Of a stretch of 64,000 bases of DNA, positions 31,901 through 41,750 are shown in pieces. The notes under the pieces were generated by a model. That model did not search any database, was not told the origin of the DNA, and saw nothing but the letters and a program-made list of their open reading frames with translations. Position numbers and translations under genes: made by a program. The number at the start of each line of letters is the position of its first letter. Position 1 is the stretch's first letter. The DNA comes from Pocillopora damicornis (Eukaryota), in NCBI RefSeq assembly GCF_003704095.1, contig NW_020847516.1, positions 310,001 to 374,000 on the forward strand, given 5' to 3'.

Positions 31901-33875
31901 TTTTTATATCGTCATAAAGAGTCGATTTCAAATTGCCGATTACATTCCAGGTTGCTGTATTTAGAGAAGAAATGTCGATATGAAATTGTTTGCCTTTCAG
32001 GAATGGGATCATTCTTCTAATCAAGGCAATTCTGATTGTTAGCAGGGTAATCTTGACAAAAAAAAATGCGTCTTATCATACGTGGTGGCACGTAAGAACC
32101 ACATGAAAATTGATTTCGTTGAAATCTAGATTTAAATTTAAAAAAAAACCGACGCACAGAACAACTTGTTACTAGCAGTTAAGCAACATGGAAAAGGGAT
32201 GATTTTCAGAAATATTTTTTGTTTCCTCACCATTCTTACTCGTCTACGATCTTATACATTAATTGTGTGTTTCAACATCGGGAAACATGTTTCGAATTTC
32301 TTTGTCTATCTTCTTTATCTTCTAGTAGATAAGAGCAATTTAATAGTGAGAAATCACATCATGCCTACATTTTTTGCTGAAAAGTAAATTCAATAATATT
32401 AGCGGTCCTTGCTGCTATTTGATTGCAAAATTTGCTTTGCTTTGATTCGACTCCAGAAGTTAACGATGGTGTCTTCCCCCGCTCTGCGCACTGCTCTTTT
32501 CTTTGCAGAGCTCACAGAAAGGAACCTACTTTTGTAGGGATGTGTTAAACACTTGTTTGTTTGGCAGGCATCTGTGCACTTCGTGATCTGCAAGTTTCTT
32601 TTCCGCTGCTCAGGGTAGTAGAGACATCAGGGCTACTGGTAATCCTTTTTGTCACGCTGAGTGCTATCAGCAAAATCTTTTCATATCTCAGGGAACGTGT
32701 CAGAGAATCAATTCACTGTTTCATTGACATTAATTTTTGTTTCAAAGGGAGCTGTAGAGTGATTGATCTGAAATTTACAGGATGACATAATCAAGGCTCT
32801 TTTTCCCTTTTTTCATGAATTTCAGGAATCGGCTATTCAATATACAAATGGATAAGACAAATATTTTCAGCCCCAAAATGGAGAAAGAAGAATGTAGGTC
32901 ATATTAAATCATTGCTTTTTCTAAGAAAGCTTCTTCGTAATGACTTTTAATCAACTCCTTTTAAGGGTGCGTCTGTTACTGGATGAAACAGGTCACATGA
33001 CGTAACGGATATTTTGACAGGTGCATTCACGATGCACTTGGCTTGCCGCTTAGTTTCTAAAACATAAACTTTCCACATTGGGCTCGATGTTGTCAATGTT
33101 GGCTAAAACTTTTGAGGTGACAAACATTCGTTGTACACATTTTTTATTCAATAATTTTCTAATTATCATCTTTAGCAGCGTTTACCTTCTTTCTAACCTT
33201 TATTTTTAAGCACTCTTTACAACAGATTAAAATTTTTCCAACTGTTATCGTGGGAGTAAATCTTCAAAAAAAAAAAGGAGACCAAAGCAATTACTAATCT
33301 GCCAGCCCTAAGTTCACTAAATTTGCTAAACTTGAATCGATGAAGCCGTTTTGAAGGAGAATTCAAGATACATTCAAATTGATATTATTATTTCCACGGC
33401 TCTTTGATTTAATTGAAAAACATCATAAGATACATGGTGATCCATTGTTCAGAATCAGTCAAATACCTAAGCACAGTTGACGAAGTTAATAAAACATTAA
33501 CAAGTTAGACATCACTTCCGTTTGTCAAGAGCTTAGGGCCGATCAGTTACAATACCACCGCGACTTTGCCGGGACATTTATTCACAGGGAAATACATTTT
33601 TTTTTGCTTGAGTTAAAGGTTCGTCGCTGTCTTCCCTTCAGGGTGTAACATTAAGTGATTACAAGGCTGTAGATATAGAAAATGTCGACGGTAAATTGCC
33701 ATGAAGCGATTCCAATAAGATTTTCAGACAATGAACTGTTAATATTCTATCTAACCAAAGCCGACTTTGTCAGGTGTGGATTTGTATAAATCTATCTTTT
33801 TATAGGCGATGTTATTTGTTTAAGAATGTGTGTTATAATCCGGCATTTTGTAGATCTCGGACGTGTGGTTTGGTC

Positions 33876-36800
33876 ATGAAGGCACCGGTTGTTCTTGTGG
33901 TTGTCATTGTTCTCTGTCATAGCATCAAGGCAGGTGGGTTTACACCACGGGAAACACAGACAAGAAAAGTATTATTTTTGTCAAAGCTATATCGTTTTGT
34001 AATTACTAAGCTTTTTCCAAGTTGTTTATTCCCTCTATAGATAAATCTTCCAGAATGTAACCTCATATTCATGATTGATAGAAAGTTATATTATTTAAAA
34101 CACTATGAATATTTTCTTGCAGTTTAGGTCCTGAAATAAGATTTGTGTGGCTGAAAGCCTTATCTCTAACCATCTTACATCCATTTAGAGTAAACTTCAG
34201 ACTCACTTAGCAACCAGTTGATAAGCATTCATTCAATGGCAAAGTGAGGACGTTGATAATTTCTTGTTGGTAATATGTTTAGATAGTTTTTGTTGAACGA
34301 ACCATTTGTCGGAGAAATTTATAGTACAATTGAAGAAGACGTACAAGTACTCCCCTGATCTTATAACTACGGGCAGAGAAAATATGTAAGAGGTAATTAA
34401 GCCCATTTGGAGCTGCTTGAGAAAATACTATGATCCACAGAACAAAACTATTCGGTGGCCAAAGACCGGAGTTACACACAAAGTACCTTCCAATTCTTTA
34501 AAAGTAATGCGTGCATTTGTCCCGCCTCGAAAACATAACCATGCAGACACAACATAAAATCAGATCAAGGTAAATACAACAAAATCGACCTTCCCCTCTG
34601 CTATGACGTCCGCACTCGTGAAGCGGAGATCGGAGTAAGGAGCTGTTGCTTAGATCCATCTGCTGGAGTCCTGAATTCAGGAATGTCGTCGAGAAGTTCT
34701 TTTACTTGAAACATTTGTCTCCCTATATCTTTTTTATCATTTGTAAGCGCTTTATAGTCGAGTTTAGTTTATACGGGCAAACATTTCCTGAAAAAATTTG
34801 AGTTGTTAGTTACTTGGTGGGAGAAGAGATGGTTTAGAGATCACCACGATGGACTTAAGGTCGAGCGGTGTTGGTTTGACCATTGGCTGGGTCATTGTTC
34901 TGTGCTCTAAGGAAATGTGCTTTACCCTGATAGTGCCTCTATTCATCCAGGAGTATTAATTGGTACCGCAAACATCAGCAGTAATGATTGTTTGGTTCGC
35001 AACATGTGAACTAGTGTCTTCCAGTGACTTTTAGTTGTTCAAAGCAAGCCCTTTATCTTTATTGCAAGATGACAGCTTTAGTGGGGAATTTCCGGGAAGC
35101 GGCGAAAAAGACTCACCTGAGACAAAAACTAACGATGACAAGTGTGAGCCAAACCCGTGCCAAAACGGAGGCACCTGTGTTGTTAACTACGATCTTATTG
35201 ATGGATACAAATGTGAATGTGAAGAAGATTTTGGTGGGATAACATGCAACGGTTAGTTTAACAAACACATGGCAGCATAAATTCACACATTCGTTTCACT
35301 GTTTATATTATGCTAGTCATACCATTTTTCCTAACTTGTTTGTATGTTTTTGTGACAAAGTTGATATTATTACAATTAACGTCAAGGGGTTGTTAAAAAT
35401 TCTTTAGACCGACAAACTGCGGCGGCATTACAAAATCCTGCAACATTACAAAATGCGTAGGTCGCCTTTATTACAAAATGCTGCAGTACCTATTACATAA
35501 TGCGCAAGTTATTACAAAATGCCGCAACCATTATTACAAGACACGTAGGTTATGACAAATGCCGCAGAACACATACCACTGAGCTAAATAGAATTTAATC
35601 GTGAGCCAGGTAAATATCCCTTAACTCCCACGACAGACCAAGACAGAATTTCTCCGCATTATATCAAAACGATATCAAGCAGGCAATTAATGAGAATCAA
35701 GAAAAATATCAATTAAGAGATTATTAGTTGAACCGATACCTATTTCTCTGAGCTTATGTCGTGCAAATCGTATGGCAGACAGTAAGGATAATTAGTAATG
35801 TGAGATCTTGGGAGTGAAAGGGTTCACACGAGACAAACGTCCTATACAAACTGAATAAAGGGGGTAAGTTTCCAAAGAAACTGTGGTGGTGCTTCAGTGG
35901 GAGAGTATAACGAGGTAATTTGGTATTATCAACTGAGTTGATAACGTAAATTGGCCACCGTTAAGAATTTCAAGCGAGTGAGTGAGTGCCCTTCGCTCTG
36001 ACAAGGACTAACGCCTAAAGGTGGCCAATTTACATTATCAACTGAATTTAGGTTGACAGGTGGATGAGAGATTTAGAGGTACAAGCCCTTAAAATAAATA
36101 ATTATAAAATGAATCAAAATGACGTTGCTTTCAAATTAACTGCTATTTTTCTTTCCATAATCGACAGAGCTACAATGCCGAATATCTCTGCCACAATTTT
36201 CGTCTCCTCATTGTGTCGTGAAACGAGAACTCAGCCGACAAATCAAGAAAACTTTGATTCGATTGACCTCGGATAAAGACAGTGACTATTCCAAGTAAGT
36301 CATCAAGAGAATGGGAGCAACACTCCTATTCTGACTTTAATCCCTAACCGCGGCCCAAAGCGCTGGAGGTTAAAGAAATTTCCTCATTAACCTAGTTCCA
36401 AATGAGTTGTTGTGAATTAATTTAAGACGCCTACTCTCTTGCACGCTTTGCTAAGGGAGCGAAATTTAAGTTTATTTTTTCCTCATTCATCTACGAATAA
36501 ATTTTATTTGAACCAACCTTATCATTTGGCTGAAAATGGAAGAATGATTCTTCATTATTCCAAGCAGTGTTAGAATTATTTTGTAATTAGATGTTAAATT
36601 CCTTAAGCAGATCAGAGCACCTGTTGGTACCTACTCTTTCCAAGAAAGGAGCAGCGAGCTTTGTACAAAGCGCGTCTACGGATCCTTTCACAATTGAATG
36701 GTACATGAAGATGACCGATAACGCAGATGTCAATAGAGATCTGGAGTCGCACTTTACGTTAAAAGATCCTCGATTTCACCAAACGCCGACGCTTATTGAT

Positions 36801-39729
36801 TTTGCCATCGTATTTCTGACGTTCTACAAAGAACACAGGGTAAGACATTGTAATACTTAGGCGGGTTGCTGATCCAGATTTATGCCATGCTTGCCTTCCT
36901 TAGAGGGCTCAAATATTGCCCACTTTGATCGCAAAATAAGACAGACAAGTATTACGACAAATGCAGCGAGAAACAAAAGACAAAAAAAAGAAGAACTCCA
37001 GTGACATAATTCGACAATCAATGAATCTTAATATGGCTCAACTCTTGTAGTGCTATCTCCTTATAGAAGGCAAGATAACACAGGAATAATCTTTAATTCA
37101 TTTCACTTTCTAGTTTAATCATTATGGCTTTCGTTTCATGTCCTGTGTAGAAACGAAGTGCTATGAGCTCTTTGAAACTTGTGCCGGCTATTGAAGAAAA
37201 TTTCTTTAAAGATCGCTGCTTTGCAGATCAGCGGGTTGCAGGCGCTAATCCATTTCAACTTTGGCGAGTAACAAATGAAAAAGGTAAATCACTTCACTGG
37301 TTTATGATATTTCCTCGGCTAAACATGCTTGCGAAGACTGAGACATCGTGCTGCAGTTATGCTGGCCTGAGAGATAAACAACAAACAGACGTTGCTAAAT
37401 TTATCAACTTCCTTCGACCGGAAGTCCCTTCGATTTACCTTCTTTTAATTTACAATTGTGAAACTTCCAAATTAGCTATTACATGCAAGGCTGTCCGCAT
37501 TGATAAACCAAATCTAAATTAGTGTTTCACCATTATTGGAGGTACCTTCCATAAGCTTTAGCCCTTCCATCCTGAATCCACACAGGAACATGCCCCGGGG
37601 AGTGAAAACTCACAATGATATGAAAATAACATGGGCTTTTAAATAATATTAGGCTTTTCATGCTCATGCGACTTTACTAGTGGACATGAACACATCTAAA
37701 CGTTAATGAAAATTCTTTCCAATTGTTTTCTCATCATCAGGGGGTAACGGCGTCGAATGGAAGTCTCTTTTTGAAGAGAAACTGAATAAAGATTTTGACT
37801 GGGAGTCGATGTTAAAAGCAGCTCTTGACAACCAAGATTCTCTAGAGCAGGTAAGAAATGTGAAGGTACAAAACAACCGTACTTGATCAAATGAACTGAT
37901 CAATTGAACCATTGACTGACTGACTGAAGGACTGTTTGACCGACTGTCTGACTGACACCATAGCCGAATGAAGGCTGACTAACTGATTTGCAAACAAACT
38001 ATGAAACTCACTGCATCACTGGCCAACTGACTAAGTTCAGTTTTTTAGCAAGGCTCTTTTTGGTTTCCAGTACATGTGATACCCAGCTGAGTTTCTGGTA
38101 AACTTTCAAGTCAAGCAAGTTACCGAATAGTGCCATTGATGGGTGTTCTTTTATCTCCAATAGGCTATAGACAATGGTGATGTTTACGTTAACATTTACC
38201 CAGAACTAGACGGAGTTAAAATGCCCGAGGCACTTTTACGTGACGTTAAATTCAACCATACTGTTTTACAAATGACTTCACCGATTGCTTTCTTCGTCGT
38301 CACAAAAGACGAGCTTGGAATAAAGCGCCTAAATCCCGTGGCTATTCAAATGGACTCGAAGCTAGAGGCGAAAGTTTACACTCCAATTTACGGAAAGGAC
38401 TGGTTCTTAGCTAAGTCATTTGTACAAAGAGCAGATTACAATTCCTTGCATCTCATAAGGAAGCGACTCAAGGTTCATTTGTATCTCGATGCGCCGTGTA
38501 CTTTGGTTGAGAAATACTTCTCAGAGTACCATCCTATCTATCAGGTTGTGCGACAGCACTGTCGAGCTGCTTTGGAGACCAATAAGCTGTTTGAAATCAA
38601 ACTGTTTGGTAAGAGTGTTACCCAATTAAAATCAAACATGAACCTTTTGGAAATGATGTAAAAACCATATTCAATCTTCATTGTGTTATCGGCATTATTA
38701 TTATTTTTCTTCATCATTCAAATTTTAATCAACTTCATATTTTCCCCTAAACAAAAACCCAAAATATTGTAGCTTCAAAAACATCGTTTTAATGTTGTCG
38801 TCTTTCGTTCATAGTTCAATTCATATCCATTTATTCACTAATTCATTCTTTCATTCACTAATTGGCTCATTGATTGATTGATTGACTGATTTATAAATTC
38901 TGTGATGCATCGATTTCATGATCTATATATTGAAGGATTGATGATTGATTCACTAACTACCGTTGATAATTAGGATTACCGTGCCAACATGGGGCTGTCA
39001 CATATGGGGGATATGGATATAATCCATTTTACACTATCAGCCTTTCGCACGCTTGATAGCTTTATTTCTGACGGTATCTATGCATTTTTCCTACAACAGG
39101 AAGAAGTGGTCCAATATACAAGGTTCTAAGTGTTGACTATTCTAGTGCTCTTGAAATTGTAAACAAAGAATACGAACGAATGACTTTTGATGACTTAGAT
39201 TTACTAGAAGACCTCAAGGTTAGTTTGGTGCATGCCACTAAAATATGCATTCGTTTTCTTGAGCATATTGTCACGTTTTGCAAGGTCATGAAAAAGTATA
39301 TTTCGACTAGAAAACGAAAATTTATTACTTGGATTGTAGAGATCTGCTGCAAGCTTAAATCTAACTACCCTTGAAACAAATGTTCACCATAAAATCTGAA
39401 AGTATGATAAAGTCTAAGGCTGAGTAATTTTATTAACAGAGCTCAGTTTTGTATCAAAAATATGTCTTTCTTCCGGCCGGTAGAGCTGTCTATATATCTA
39501 TGTAACAACCTTTACATAGATAAAAGGGGGTAAGCTTCTAAAGAAACTGTGGTGCTGCGTCGGTAGAAGGAGGGGGGGGGTATAAAAAGATAGTTTGGTC
39601 ATAATAGCTGAGTTGAAAATGTAAATTGACCACCGTCTAGAATTTCTAAGCTAATGTTTCGGGCGCTACAAGATAATCTGGTTTTATCAACTGAGTTGAT
39701 AATGTAAATTGGCCATCGTAAGGAGTTTC

Positions 39730-39764
<35 letters not shown>

Positions 39765-41750
39765 GCGTTTCGCAACGAAACAACCAAAAAATTTAGCCGA
39801 CATGCGTATAACCTGTCATGTTTTTACCGTTAGTCATGAAAAAGGTTAACCGTTAAACCTTTTTCCTACAAGTTTTCCTAAATCTAAAATTGACTGCCTT
39901 TTTTTTCTTCTAACAGAAACGAGGAGTCGATGACGTAGAGAAGCTTCCATATTATCCGTACAGAGATGACGGAAAGATTTTGTATCAAAAACTTAGTGAA
40001 TTTGTTGACGCCTACATTGACGCGTAAGTGAATATGCACTCCTTTCCTTACTTTTAAGTAAATTAGGTGGAATACGCTCCACAAGAAGACATTCCCTGTA
40101 TTGCGTATGATTTTCAAGCAGGCACCACTACCTCTCGAAGATGGAAACCAACCTAAATTACCTGCCAACCTAAAATTATTTTAAATGTTCACACGAGACG
40201 TAACAGAGTCTGATTTAACAACTTTTAATTTAGAAAGGAGGAAGTCGCGTCAATTCTCTCGAAACAGGACTTTCCCCCCTGAACCAATGAGAAAGTCATA
40301 TACCCTACTTCCCTACTTTCCAATGTCGAGGTACCGTAAATTCGCCTGGTGAAAAAATCATGTATGAAGGAGAAAGAGTAATTTCCTGATCGCTCCATTT
40401 TGTCTCATCACACTGTTTCTCGTGTGGATCTTGTAGGCAGTACGAAGATGACGACCAGGTGTTAGCAGATAACGAGCTTCAAGAGTTTGCAAATGAGTTG
40501 TCAGCTGATGGTACACATGGTGATTTTGCAGGACTTGGCAAGGTAACAAATATGCTGTGGCACTTTATGCAGAAACGCGATCTTTATTTTTGAGCAAGCC
40601 TAGAAAAGAGGGATTTCCTCTTACAAACTACTATTATGGTTTTCCGATCAGTTCTCAATTATCATCAATTTGGTTCTGTAGAACATTTTCTTTTACCATC
40701 ACTTTTTTCTTTGAAGGTAAAGAAATTCCCAGCCAGCATCAAAACCAAAGCTGCCCTAAGACAAGTGTTAACCACCCTTTTTTGGGCGTTCACTGGCGGC
40801 CACGCAGCAAGTACCTACCCTATACTGGAGTACGGTGGCTTTGTACCAAATGCACCGCACAGACTGTTTGCAGATAGTAACGGCAATACCGAATTCAGCA
40901 ATTTGATGTTTGGAAACAAAGCTGTAGCACTGGTAATAATCGACTTTGGGTAAAAAATTGTAACATTATTACGGGCTCCAATTCGGTGAGCAAAGTTTAG
41001 AGGTTTCGCTTTCAGAGCAATTTGTTGGCTAATTATGCGCCAAAGCTGATAAGCCTCACTCTTTTACTAACGTCATTAATTTACCAGCTGGTCATCGATT
41101 TTTTCATTAATAATAATCCAATAAGCATTTCGAAACCTTTGTGCGCAATATGGACAGGTGGCAGTGATTTTTTGCAGCTCCCTATGACTCACTGCACGGC
41201 AATCTGTGGTAATAATGATCATCAAGAAGTACTTATCGATGAAGAGACCTCTCAATTTCAAAAATGTGATGAATTGACGACATTGCGGCTAAAAGTCGTA
41301 ATTTCGTTAATGGTAAAAAATGGTTAAATTAGAGAATAGTGGCCCAAAATTGGCCCGCTCGACCTCGTAAAACTCGCTTTCCTGAGTTTCATTTAGACAA
41401 ATATAACCTCTTACGCACGGTGGGTATAATTTGATTTCAGTTATAAAAGTAGCCCGCCTTTTGACAGCTTATAAGTTTTTTTCTCATCTTACCTATCATA
41501 ACCTTTTCTACTGTGACAGGAAATAGCCGAACTAAGTTCTAACCTGGCAGGAATTCACCTCGATCAGTTACTCGATTATTCAACAAAGATTGAAGGTAAC
41601 AAAGGCAGAGAAGTAGTTGAAAAGTTTCACGACGAACTCAAGAATGTAGGCCAAGAGATAACCAAAGCCAACGATAAGCGAGTAAAGGAAGGTTTTCTGC
41701 CATATCCATACCTCCTGCCAGAATACGTGTCTAACAGTGCAAGCACGTAA
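33876..41750 (+). CDS. Secreted EGF-lipoxygenase-like protein (~687 aa, 12 exons), with no PLAT domain and substituted metal ligands
   Basis: Exons: 33876-33933 (signal peptide MKAPVVLVVVIVLCHSIKA), 35069-35251 (EGF, CEPNPCQNGGTC...YKCECEEDFGGITC), 36168-36294, 36611-36839, 37151-37283 (DRCFADQRVAGANP), 37741-37850, 38164-38608 (PVAIQM, WFLAKSFV, HPIY), 39100-39218, 39917-40023 (KRGVDD, YPYRDDG), 40437-40542 (DNELQEF), 40717-40932 (GHAAST, FVPNAP) and 41520-41750 (PYPYLLPEYVSNSAST*). Sum 2064 nt. Confidence 0.9.
34815..34970 (+). mobile_element. Degraded tRNA-derived SINE-like relic
   Basis: Eroded A/B-box-like head followed by gggtcattgttctgtgctctaagg...ctttac...agtgcctct...catccaggagtattaattggtacc. 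The same core occurs on the minus strand at ~50125-50278. Confidence 0.5.
35426..35572. repeat. Array of about 7 degenerate ATTACAAAATGC motifs
   Basis: attacaaaatcc, attacaaaatgc, attacaaaatgc, attacataatgc, attacaaaatgc, attacaagacac and atgacaaatgc at roughly 18-24 bp spacing. Confidence 0.75.
35618..35825. mobile_element. MITE-like element with TIRs cccttaactccca / tgggagtgaaagggtt
   Basis: Imperfect terminal inverted repeats around a ~200-bp non-coding body. A related element lies at ~63389-63565. Confidence 0.6.
35855..36046. repeat. Dispersed repeat family copy with a partial internal inversion
   Basis: Same family as 27945-28121. ttgataacgtaaattggccacc is later mirrored by ggtggccaatttacattatcaa. 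Confidence 0.75.
39518..39770 (-). repeat. Dispersed repeat family copy with internal duplication and a degenerate hammerhead motif (39733-39766, minus strand)
   Basis: Minus strand reads gct-CTGACGA-a-GGGC-taac-GCTC-AAAA-CG-TC-agc, a hammerhead core with GAAA mutated to AAAA. Confidence 0.7.

What the first reader, a model, noticed from the sequence alone, without database searches (positions are those of the whole stretch)
33876..41750. Secreted EGF-lipoxygenase with a dismantled iron site: probable pseudo-enzyme or neofunctionalised LOX
Architecture: signal peptide + acidic linker + EGF replace the PLAT domain of animal LOXs and the catalase-like AOS of known coral AOS-LOX fusions. By manual alignment to human ALOX5, the first Fe ligand His367 is Lys (38461-38463; LHLIRKRLKVHL versus HQTITHLLRTHL). 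His372 (38476) and His550 (40801) are kept, Asn554 is Thr (HAAST versus HAAVN), the C-terminal Ile is Thr (NSAST*), and the Ala/Gly stereo-determinant (Coffa site) is Phe. A new His sits one turn before the lost ligand (38449). The frame is intact over 12 exons, so it is not a decayed pseudogene. Inference: an extracellular lipid/oxylipin-binding protein, or a LOX fold with a rebuilt metal site and new chemistry. Secreted PLAT-less LOXs are known in fungi and Pseudomonas but are not the animal norm.
Basis: partly seen in the sequence, partly recalled or inferred. Interest (0 to 1): 0.8.

Follow-up and report, generated by a model that had tools for sequence, protein, structure and literature searches.

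The report
Secreted coral lipoxygenase without iron ligands
An expressed stony-coral gene encodes a secreted protein with the lipoxygenase fold in which two iron-holding residues were replaced (His to Lys, Asn to Thr) before stony corals, sea anemones and soft corals diverged and have been kept since, so it is most likely a non-oxidising pseudo-enzyme with a new extracellular role, although databases name it as an ordinary oxylipin enzyme.

Summary
The 12-exon model (33876-41750, + strand, all GT-AG) gives a 687-aa protein identical to RefSeq XP_027058331.1 of Pocillopora damicornis. Spliced RNA contigs from four RNA runs join the signal-peptide, EGF and lipoxygenase (LOX) exons at these boundaries.

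HMMER alignments to solved LOX structures place Lys380 (38461-38463) on the first iron-ligand His and Thr572 on the ligand Asn. His385, His568 and the C-terminal register are kept.

The gene belongs to an anthozoan-wide orthologue group: stony corals, four sea-anemone genera and soft corals. Every member has a signal peptide, an EGF domain, Lys at the first ligand and Thr at the Asn site. Three of four soft-coral sequences have also lost the second His. All 62 other family members compared have His at the first site.

dN/dS is 0.09 overall and about 0.015 over the former active-site helices. The clade is monophyletic (support 100) and follows the species tree.

Most likely this is a metal-free pseudo-lipoxygenase with a binding role. 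A rebuilt catalytic site in hexacorals is not excluded.

C-terminal Thr is normal for this family. The "new His" is absent from soft corals. EGF was added to an ancestrally PLAT-less secreted family.

I found no paper describing this. Other notes of this scan report related LOX oddities elsewhere in the genome.

The parts
33876..33933 (+). Exon 1: start codon and signal peptide (aa 1-19 plus one base; phase-1 donor directly after the predicted cleavage motif S-I-K-A)
   Evidence: Sequence. Joint 33933|35069 in RNA contigs of runs X5, X13 and X11. All full-length orthologues have the same type of N-terminus: Met, one or two basic residues, then a 12-14 residue hydrophobic run. No signal-peptide predictor was available.
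35069..35251 (+). Exon 2: acidic Ser-Gly linker and one EGF-like domain (six Cys, 35143-35247), phase 1-1
   Evidence: Pfam EGF 1.9e-08 on the exon and 4.8e-07 on the whole product. Five of the six Cys are invariant in the 14 clade members; the first is present in 13 of 14. Joint 35251|36168 in all four RNA runs.
36168..36294 (+). Exon 3: conserved Cys84/Cys96 pair and an S-L-P-Q motif at the start of the N-terminal helical extension
   Evidence: The Cys pair is conserved in 14 of 14 clade members and in secreted sister paralogues.
36611..36839 (+). Exon 4: clade-specific invariant N-terminal helices. An alternative acceptor at 36608 (tandem NAGNAG) adds one residue.
   Evidence: Joint 36294|36611 in X5, X10 and X13; 36608 is used in an X11 contig. 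RefSeq isoform X1 (688 aa) uses 36608. Invariant block at aa 140-179.
37151..37283 (+). Exon 5: start of the Pfam lipoxygenase match
37741..37850 (+). Exon 6
   Evidence: Joints 37283|37741 and 37850|38164 in RNA contigs.
38164..38608 (+). Exon 7: N-glycosylation sequon N311-H-T (38254-38262); former ligand helix with His376 (38449-51), Lys380 (38461-63, replaces iron ligand 1), Arg381 (replaces the conserved Leu), His385 (38476-78, ligand 2 kept); Phe423 (38590-92) at the Ala/Gly stereo-control site
   Evidence: HMMER alignment to 5med. Pfam 2e-06 on the exon. Family tables. Codons. RNA contigs of four runs cover 38162-38607 with no difference at these codons. The sequon is present in 14 of 14 clade members.
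39100..39218 (+). Exon 8
   Evidence: Joint 38608|39100 in X5, X10 and X11.
39917..40023 (+). Exon 9
   Evidence: Splice signals. Supported by identity of the model to P0243 and by the transcript ORF P0163.
40437..40542 (+). Exon 10
40717..40932 (+). Exon 11: second ligand cluster, His568 kept (40801-03) and Thr572 (40813-15) in place of the ligand Asn
   Evidence: HMMER alignment to coral 8R-LOX chains 3fg1, 3fg3 and 3fg4. Thr in all 14 clade members of the joint alignment, against Asn in 54 of 62 others. Thr codons ACC, ACT and ACG occur in different species.
41520..41750 (+). Exon 12: C-terminal helices and the C-terminus N-S-A-S-T (Thr 41745-47), stop TAA 41748-50
   Evidence: HMMER aligns residue 75 of 76 to residue 568 of 569 in 5med, so the terminal residue is in register with the C-terminal Ile, whose carboxylate binds the iron in LOXs. 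The terminus is conserved in the clade.

Best explanation
The gene encodes a secreted, disulfide-bonded and probably N-glycosylated protein. It consists of a signal peptide, an acidic linker, one EGF domain, an N-terminal helical extension and a PLAT-less lipoxygenase catalytic fold.

In the common ancestor of Anthozoa a member of the secreted cnidarian LOX family gained the EGF domain and lost the canonical non-heme iron site. Ligand His1 became Lys, ligand Asn became Thr, the neighbouring substrate-clamping Leu became Arg/Lys, and the Ala/Gly oxygen-access residue became a bulky Phe/Tyr/His.

I conclude that it no longer works as a fatty-acid dioxygenase. It acts as a non-catalytic pseudo-enzyme. 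The fold is kept for binding, most plausibly of a lipid or oxylipin, possibly an anionic one given the extra positive charges on the ligand helix. The EGF domain and linker place or present the protein outside the cell. The buried C-terminal carboxylate that normally binds iron is probably neutralised by the Lys380 ammonium group.

What is shown: gene structure, expression, fold, substitutions, their phylogenetic depth and purifying selection. What is inferred: absence of metal and activity, the Lys-carboxylate pairing, and the nature of the ligand.
For: - Gene and expression. Spliced RNA joints come from four RNA runs. The model is identical to P0243. Full-length intron-free ORFs occur on RNA-derived contigs of relatives.
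- Ligand loss. Lys falls on His257 of 5med and Thr on the ligand Asn of 8R-LOX. His at site 1 is present in 62 of 62 non-clade homologues and Asn in 54 of 62.
- Depth. All 16 clade members have Lys at ligand site 1, and all 15 that cover the Asn site have Thr (P0170 has a gap there); all have an EGF domain, and those with complete N-termini have a signal-peptide-like start. They come from Scleractinia, Actiniaria (Exaiptasia, Actinia, Actinostola, Nematostella) and Octocorallia (Paramuricea, Dendronephthya). Three of four octocoral sequences also have Asn instead of the second His, which argues against a conserved metal site.
- Phylogeny. The clade is monophyletic with SH-aLRT 100 and a stem of 0.69, and its inner topology matches the species tree.
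- Selection. dN/dS is 0.09 at dS 1.17, and 0.015 over aa 360-430. Thr572 is kept through three different codons. The path from Nematostella to this coral is about 0.7 in the clade against about 1.7 in a canonical sister clade.
- Fold. AlphaFold2 of the orthologue P0127 gives pTM 0.85 with the LOX core mostly above pLDDT 90, including the C-terminus. Foldseek matches 8R-LOX at E 3e-30 and Cyanothece LOX2 at TM 0.81.
- Secretory features. Ten Cys positions are conserved in 13-14 of 14 clade members, and the N-x-T sequon is present in 14 of 14.
- Published criterion. Two ligand clusters (His+His and His+Asn) are described as essential for true LOX sequences (PMC6612559). The 5-LOX ligands are listed in PMC5113960.
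Against: - Nothing here measures metal content or activity.
- Hexacoral members, and one of four octocoral sequences (P0174), keep His385, His568 and the C-terminal carboxylate. Together these could still hold a metal as a 2-His-1-carboxylate set.
- The former active-site helices are the most constrained part of the protein. A pure scaffold would not obviously need that.
- From memory, not checked here: mutants of the first His of human 5-LOX were reported to keep part of their iron while losing activity.
- No coordinates were available, so the Lys-carboxylate contact and the state of the substrate cavity are untested.
- No ligand, expression site or phenotype is known.
Confidence: 0.68

Rival explanations
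1. Neofunctionalised enzyme. In hexacorals the remaining His385, His568 and C-terminal carboxylate form a 2-His-1-carboxylate metal site with more open coordination positions. Alternatively, Lys380 itself is catalytic. Either way the protein would carry out new chemistry on extracellular lipids, for example transformation of hydroperoxides, rather than dioxygenation.
For: Three of the five ligands are kept in all hexacoral members. The constraint is strongest over the ligand helices, with omega about 0.015. The clade-specific invariant changes cluster at the site and not elsewhere. The C-terminal register is conserved.
Against: The second His is Asn in three of four octocoral orthologues, and the upstream His is Gln in all four, so no single rebuilt site is conserved across the clade. 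Phe/Tyr/His at the oxygen-access position and Arg/Lys at the substrate-clamp Leu fill or charge the pocket.
Confidence: 0.22
2. Ordinary iron lipoxygenase. Lys and Thr are tolerated as ligands or replaced by water, and the protein is a normal secreted dioxygenase like its sister paralogues.
For: It has the LOX fold and the Pfam domain. Its sister paralogues are canonical and also carry signal peptides.
Against: None of 62 other homologues has anything but His at ligand 1. Four site residues changed together on one long stem branch. The two ligand clusters are treated as essential for true LOX sequences (PMC6612559).
Confidence: 0.04
3. Artefact or decaying pseudogene. Either the EGF and LOX parts are separate genes merged by prediction, or the substitutions are recent damage or assembly error.
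For: None found. One assembly-versus-RNA difference exists at 38363 (Leu347 in the assembly, Pro in the RNA contigs), but it is away from the site.
Against: Spliced contigs run from the EGF exon through exon 8 in one 2642-nt record. Intron-free 698-700 aa ORFs are found in relatives. The frame is intact, dN/dS is 0.09, and the same residues occur in species across Anthozoa.
Confidence: 0.01

Closest known systems
Secreted PLAT-less LOX family of cnidarians and placozoans (for example Nematostella XP_048584002.1, Acropora XP_029186042.2, Stylophora XP_022779753.1, Hydra XP_047133050.1; database names '5-lipoxygenase-like')
   Same: It is the sister group in the tree (31-row clade, support 100). 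It shares the signal peptide, the Cys pair before an N-terminal helical extension, a second Cys pair in the core, C-terminal Thr, the absence of PLAT, and the absence of an intron after the ligand helix. Paralogues lie in the same genome on contigs C3637, C788 and C3046.
   Different: These proteins keep His-x4-His, His-x3-Asn, Leu after His1 and Gly/Ala at the stereo-control site. They have no EGF domain and evolve about twice as fast.
Cyanothece sp. LOX2 'mini-lipoxygenase' (PDB 5med) and Pseudomonas aeruginosa secreted LOX (PDB 4g32, 5ir4)
   Same: 5med is the best sequence match among solved structures (1.2e-08 for exon 7 alone) and has the highest target-normalised TM-score (0.81). These LOXs also have no PLAT domain and carry an N-terminal helical extension. 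PA-LOX is secreted and was crystallised with a phospholipid in its cavity (entry titles).
   Different: They are bacterial, catalytically active, have a full ligand set and no EGF domain.
Coral allene oxide synthase-lipoxygenase fusion and 8R-LOX (PDB 3dy5, 3fg1, 4qwt), the name under which databases file this gene
   Same: Same LOX catalytic fold (Foldseek E about 3e-30, TM 0.70), and a cnidarian origin.
   Different: The fusion has a catalase-like AOS domain, a PLAT/C2-like domain, no signal peptide and a canonical iron site. The protein here has none of the first two (Pfam) and belongs to a different branch of the family.
Epidermal LOX3 (ALOXE3) and fungal secreted Mn-LOX (from my own knowledge, not tested here)
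   Same: Both are LOX-fold proteins that depart from standard Fe-dioxygenase behaviour. ALOXE3 acts as a hydroperoxide isomerase. Mn-LOX is secreted and uses another metal.
   Different: Both keep the full set of protein metal ligands. The protein here does not.

Membership tests
Lipoxygenase (Pfam PF00305), catalytic non-heme iron dioxygenase | LOX catalytic-domain fold and profile match | tested here: met
   Pfam 9.5e-35 on the whole product. AlphaFold2 model of the orthologue against PDB LOXs: E about 3e-30, TM 0.65-0.82.
Lipoxygenase (Pfam PF00305), catalytic non-heme iron dioxygenase | Ligand cluster 1: His-x4-His on the long central helix | tested here: not met
   The window has Lys-x4-His. 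Lys380 aligns to His257 of 5med. 62 of 62 non-clade homologues have His.
Lipoxygenase (Pfam PF00305), catalytic non-heme iron dioxygenase | Ligand cluster 2: His-x3-Asn (His or Ser in a few LOXs) | tested here: not met
   The window has His-x3-Thr, aligned to the H-A-A-V-N motif of 8R-LOX. Asn is present in 54 of 62 non-clade homologues.
Lipoxygenase (Pfam PF00305), catalytic non-heme iron dioxygenase | C-terminal residue in register, so that its carboxylate can reach the metal site | tested here: met
   The alignment ends one residue before the end of both the query and 5med. The terminus is conserved in the clade.
Lipoxygenase (Pfam PF00305), catalytic non-heme iron dioxygenase | Bound Fe or Mn and dioxygenase activity | not testable with these tools
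   This needs recombinant protein, ICP-MS and activity assays.
Animal PLAT-LOX and coral AOS-LOX fusion (the database name of this gene) | N-terminal PLAT/C2-like domain and, for the fusion, a catalase-like AOS domain | tested here: not met
   Pfam finds only EGF and Lipoxygenase. The N-terminus is signal peptide, linker, EGF and helices. The gene lies in a different clade from the PLAT-bearing animal LOXs.
Secreted PLAT-less cnidarian/placozoan LOX family | Signal peptide, conserved Cys pairs, helical N-terminal extension, and phylogenetic placement | tested here: met
   31-row clade with support 100. Cys84/96 and Cys392/413 are shared. N-termini were compared. The signal peptide is judged by inspection only; no predictor was run.
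EGF-like domain (PF00008) | Six-cysteine pattern and profile match | tested here: met
   1.9e-08 on the exon. Five of the six Cys are invariant in the 14 clade members, and the first is present in 13 of 14. The calcium-binding EGF consensus is not present, by inspection.
Pseudo-enzyme (operational definition) | Enzyme fold kept, catalytic residues lost, purifying selection, expression | tested here: met
   Absence of activity itself was not tested.

The most novel reading that the evidence does not exclude
The lipoxygenase fold may have been converted about half a billion years ago or more into something that is not a dioxygenase but still uses the old active site. One version is a metal-free pocket: Lys380 takes the place and charge of the iron against the buried C-terminal carboxylate, and the pocket reads or carries extracellular oxylipins or anionic lipids. 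The bolder version applies to hexacorals: a 2-His-1-carboxylate or Lys-dependent centre with new chemistry on extracellular lipids. The probability given here is for the bolder, catalytic version.
Probability: 0.2. Interest if true: 0.85.

Novelty: new variant of a known kind. Interest (0 to 1): 0.62.

Why it matters
- **New pseudo-enzyme family.** As far as ten full-text searches show, no natural family of lipoxygenase-fold proteins without the iron ligands has been described. This one is old (shared by hexacorals and octocorals), strongly constrained, and present in every anthozoan group sampled, so it must do something useful.
[quoted passage not shown] Coral stress, wound-healing and symbiosis studies that count LOX or AOS-LOX transcripts may therefore read a probable non-enzyme as oxylipin synthesis.
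- **Natural experiment.** It shows what a LOX fold needs once the metal is gone, with a Lys opposite the buried C-terminal carboxylate.
- **Candidate function.** It is a candidate extracellular binder or regulator of oxylipins in animals where such lipids are proposed as immune and symbiosis signals. The Nematostella orthologue makes this testable by knock-down or knock-out.

Tried and rejected
**Readings tested and rejected**
- Pseudogene or merged gene model: rejected.
- C-terminal Thr as part of a dismantled site: rejected, because canonical sister paralogues also end in Thr.
- The upstream "new His" as a clade-wide replacement ligand: rejected, because it is Gln in octocorals.
- EGF as a replacement for PLAT: rejected, because the whole sister family lacks PLAT.

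**Leads that went nowhere**
- A planula-enriched "AOS-LOX-like" protein in a Pocillopora larval proteome (XP_027058640.1, PMC12960093) is a different accession from this gene (XP_027058329 to 331, RMX61109). This gene's accessions are absent from that paper's supplements.
- The Nematostella matrisome supplements hold no LOX entry.
- The "lipoxygenase" in the Acropora skeletal proteome paper is only a PLAT domain of a PKD1-like protein.
- Accession searches in full texts found nothing.
- There is no conserved flanking synteny within 10 kb in two other genomes.
- Ten long ORFs elsewhere in the window gave no Pfam match.
- NCBIfam gave nothing.

**Method notes**
- The joined 687-aa model was built and used only inside scripts, for local MAFFT, tblastn, dN/dS and trees. 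Searches used exon references or database protein ids. Once P0243 proved identical to the model, that id was used.
- The large representative search was used early, because an exon-sized query cannot reach full-length relatives through the length-limited word search.
- No signal-peptide predictor and no model coordinates were available.

Full report
**Scope and constraints**

The window is eukaryotic, so I built the spliced model by hand and checked it against RNA and relatives. The joined model existed only in scripts (/scratch) and was used for local alignment, tblastn, dN/dS and trees. Later a database protein, P0243, turned out to be identical to the model, and I used that id for whole-protein scans.

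**Gene model and expression**

The model has twelve + strand exons with AG/GT signals and consistent phases: 33876-33933, 35069-35251, 36168-36294, 36611-36839, 37151-37283, 37741-37850, 38164-38608, 39100-39218, 39917-40023, 40437-40542, 40717-40932 and 41520-41750. They give 2064 nt and 687 aa with one terminal stop.

An index search found 22 runs in 8 studies that hold the stretch. The RNA runs hold 0.25-0.35 of the sampled words, which is close to the exon share of the 8-kb query.

I laid contigs of four RNA runs on 33800-39799.
- GT..AG joints appear at 33933|35069, 35251|36168, 36294|36611, 36839|37151, 37283|37741, 37850|38164 and 38608|39100.
- One 2642-nt contig carries the EGF exon through exon 8 without interruption.
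- One run uses an acceptor 3 nt upstream (36608). This is a tandem NAGNAG site, which RefSeq lists as the 688-aa isoform X1.

The model equals XP_027058331.1 of Pocillopora damicornis residue for residue. That record sits on a 398,271-bp contig, which fits the window's position at 310001-374000 of its contig. A transcript-derived 687-aa ORF (P0163) differs at four residues, none at an exon junction.

**Ligand positions**

HMMER against PDB sequences aligns exon 7 without gaps around the site to Cyanothece LOX2 (5med, 1.2e-08). Lys380 falls on His257 and His385 on His262.

Exon 11 aligns to coral 8R-LOX. The His and Thr of the window's H-A-A-S-T motif fall on the His and Asn of H-A-A-V-N.

Exon 12 aligns to within one residue of the end of both sequences, so the C-terminal carboxylate is in register.

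The 5-LOX ligands His367, His372, His550, Asn554 and Ile673 are as listed in PMC5113960. My residue-by-residue mapping to 5-LOX numbers rests on my memory of that sequence.

The position four residues before Lys380 is usually Gln or Glu in homologues and is His here. The residue after ligand 1 is Leu in 45 of 56 non-clade homologues and is Arg here. The Ala/Gly stereo-control position is Phe.

**Orthologues**

The representative search with exon 7 found four close clusters and then a gap down to 40% identity or less. The word search with the full-length orthologue P0127 then showed the full group:
- Stony corals: Pocillopora, Stylophora, Oculina, Desmophyllum, Porites, Montipora and five Acropora species.
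- Sea anemones: Exaiptasia, Actinia, Actinostola and Nematostella.
- Octocorals: Paramuricea, Dendronephthya and two transcriptome ORFs.

All 16 sequences compared have Lys at ligand 1. All 15 that cover the Asn site have Thr there (P0170 has a gap at that point). All have a C-terminal Ser/Gly-Thr and an EGF domain. Those with complete N-termini have a signal-peptide-like start.

Two more genomic loci from other assemblies (L019, L020) carry the same exons, intron positions and residues.

Among 62 other family members, ligand 1 is His in 62 and the Asn site is Asn in 54.

Three of four octocoral sequences also have Asn in place of the second His. All four have Gln, not His, at the upstream position. 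Their stereo-control residue is Phe, Tyr or His.

**Selection and phylogeny**

Against the intron-free transcript L017 (82% identity), dN is 0.105, dS is 1.17 and omega is 0.09. Omega by region is 0.29 for the signal peptide and linker, 0.06 for EGF, 0.04 for aa 81-200 and about 0.015 for aa 360-430, the former active-site helices. dS is near saturation, so these values are rough.

Thr572 is encoded by ACC, ACT or ACG in different species.

In a 45-row maximum-likelihood tree the group is monophyletic (SH-aLRT 100) on a stem of 0.69. Octocorals, sea anemones and stony corals are each monophyletic, in the order of the species tree. So the changes date to before the hexacoral-octocoral split. 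That this split is older than about 500 million years is my own knowledge.

Path lengths inside the clade are roughly half those between the same taxa in a canonical sister clade: about 0.7 from Nematostella to this coral, against about 1.7. The caveat is that orthology within the sister clade was not established.

**Family context**

The sister groups are signal-peptide-bearing, PLAT-less LOX homologues of cnidarians and Trichoplax, with canonical ligands. They are named "5-lipoxygenase-like" in databases.

This genome has at least three such paralogue loci with readable canonical motifs (C3637, C788, C3046). It also has classic PLAT-type LOX clusters on C4204, C2496 and C3860.

The sister proteins also end in Thr. 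They share the Cys84/96 and Cys392/413 pairs.

The next relatives out are bacterial and cyanobacterial mini-LOXs, and the PLAT-bearing animal LOXs lie elsewhere in the tree.

EGF is therefore an addition to an ancestrally PLAT-less secreted protein. C-terminal Thr is not a loss.

Ten Cys positions conserved in 13-14 of 14 clade members and an N-x-T sequon at Asn311, present in 14 of 14, fit a secretory-pathway protein.

**Structure**

AlphaFold2 on the orthologue P0127 with a 45-sequence alignment gave mean pLDDT 83 and pTM 0.85. The LOX core and the C-terminus are mostly above 90. The signal peptide, linker and EGF are below 50.

Foldseek against the PDB returns only LOXs at the top: 8R-LOX (E 3e-30, TM 0.70), Cyanothece LOX2 (target TM 0.81), 5-LOX, 11R-LOX, and P. 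aeruginosa LOX including its phospholipid complex.

Coordinates are not returned, so the geometry of the site could not be inspected.

**Clade-specific changes**

Only 13 positions are invariant in the four clade members of the first alignment (three corals and Exaiptasia) and different from a strong consensus elsewhere. They include Lys380, Arg381, Thr572, Leu375, Asp389, Leu394, Lys397 and Gly605.

Across 14 members including octocorals, 226 of 687 positions are nearly invariant. Of these, 84 are specific to the clade. They are densest in the N-terminal helices (aa 140-225) and around the former site.

The ligand helix carries three more positive charges than in the sister proteins.

**Mechanism**

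The evidence fits one burst of change on the stem (EGF gain and four site changes), followed by very strong constraint. That is the usual signature of a new function, not of decay.

I take loss of dioxygenase activity as most likely, for three reasons.
- Ligand 1 is otherwise invariant.
- Two ligands changed together with the substrate clamp and the oxygen-access residue.
- No common metal-binding set survives across the clade.

The buried C-terminal carboxylate and the invariant Lys suggest that Lys replaces the cation. This is an inference.

A binding role for the retained cavity, with a lipid as the obvious candidate, is also an inference.

The main rival is a rebuilt catalytic centre in hexacorals (His385, His568, carboxylate). 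It is supported by the extreme constraint on the site and is not excluded.

**Literature**

Ten full-text searches found no paper on this clade, on EGF-LOX proteins or on any pseudo-lipoxygenase.

A recent anthozoan oxylipin study mined LOX and AOS-LOX sequences; the passages I retrieved do not mention this group.

PMC6612559 states that the two ligand clusters are essential for true LOX sequences.

Two earlier notes of this scan, on other parts of the genome, report a secreted PLAT-less LOX and AOS-LOX fusions with a ligand-less catalase-like domain. The first agrees with the sister family seen here.

**Limits**

There is no signal-peptide predictor, no coordinates, no metal or activity data, no expression site, and saturated dS. 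Exon joints 8 to 12 rest on protein identity to transcript ORFs, not on laid reads.

Noticed in passing
window 36606-36611: A tandem NAGNAG acceptor (aag|cag) gives two isoforms that differ by one residue (..Y-S-K-S-E.. versus ..Y-S-N-R-S-E..). Both are seen in RNA contigs and in RefSeq isoforms X1 and X2. The same pair of forms occurs in a related coral (P0126 versus P0127).
   Followed up: yes
window 38363: The assembly has T (Leu347). All four RNA runs and the transcript ORF P0163 have C (Pro), which is also the residue in orthologues. This is either a polymorphism or an assembly error, and it is away from the ligand site.
   Followed up: partly
window 35857-35993 and 39523-39751: Copies of one short interspersed repeat lie in introns 2 and 8 (66-85% alike). 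RNA contig depth there is in the thousands, and many contigs join the two copies or run on into unrelated sequence. It looks like an abundant, transcribed SINE-like element.
   Followed up: partly
window 33904-35096: Low-depth RNA contigs (depth 3-7, against 33-67 for the spliced contig) cover intron 1 continuously. This points to unspliced precursor or DNA carry-over.
   Followed up: no
window 35071-35142 (linker, aa 20-44): The linker between the signal peptide and EGF is acidic and holds Ser-Gly dipeptides in eight of the ten hexacoral orthologues (two N-terminally truncated sequences score none), but in none of the four octocoral ones. Nematostella has a 140-residue acidic version. These are candidate glycosaminoglycan attachment sites, which is speculation.
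   Followed up: partly
L020 13060-13122: A second, diverged copy of the start of the exon holding the His-x3-Thr cluster lies about 1.2 kb upstream of the real exon in another coral genome. It may be an exon duplicate or an alternative exon.
   Followed up: no
P0026 (Clavelina lepadiformis CAK8676793.1): In the family alignment, a tunicate LOX homologue shows Arg at the third His ligand and Thr at the Asn site. It could be an independent case of a LOX fold without a full ligand set.
   Followed up: no
G000 contigs C3637, C788, C3046 (L005/L014, L012/L015, L016), also C2640, C3883, C2558, C1053: The same genome holds several loci of the canonical secreted PLAT-less LOX family. The ligand helix there lies in one exon, unlike the PLAT-type LOX genes on C4204, C2496 and C3860, which have an intron just before the first ligand His.
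   Followed up: partly
database names of P0243, P0003, P0169, P0173: [quoted passage not shown] It has no AOS and no PLAT domain and lacks two iron ligands, so these names are misleading.
   Followed up: yes
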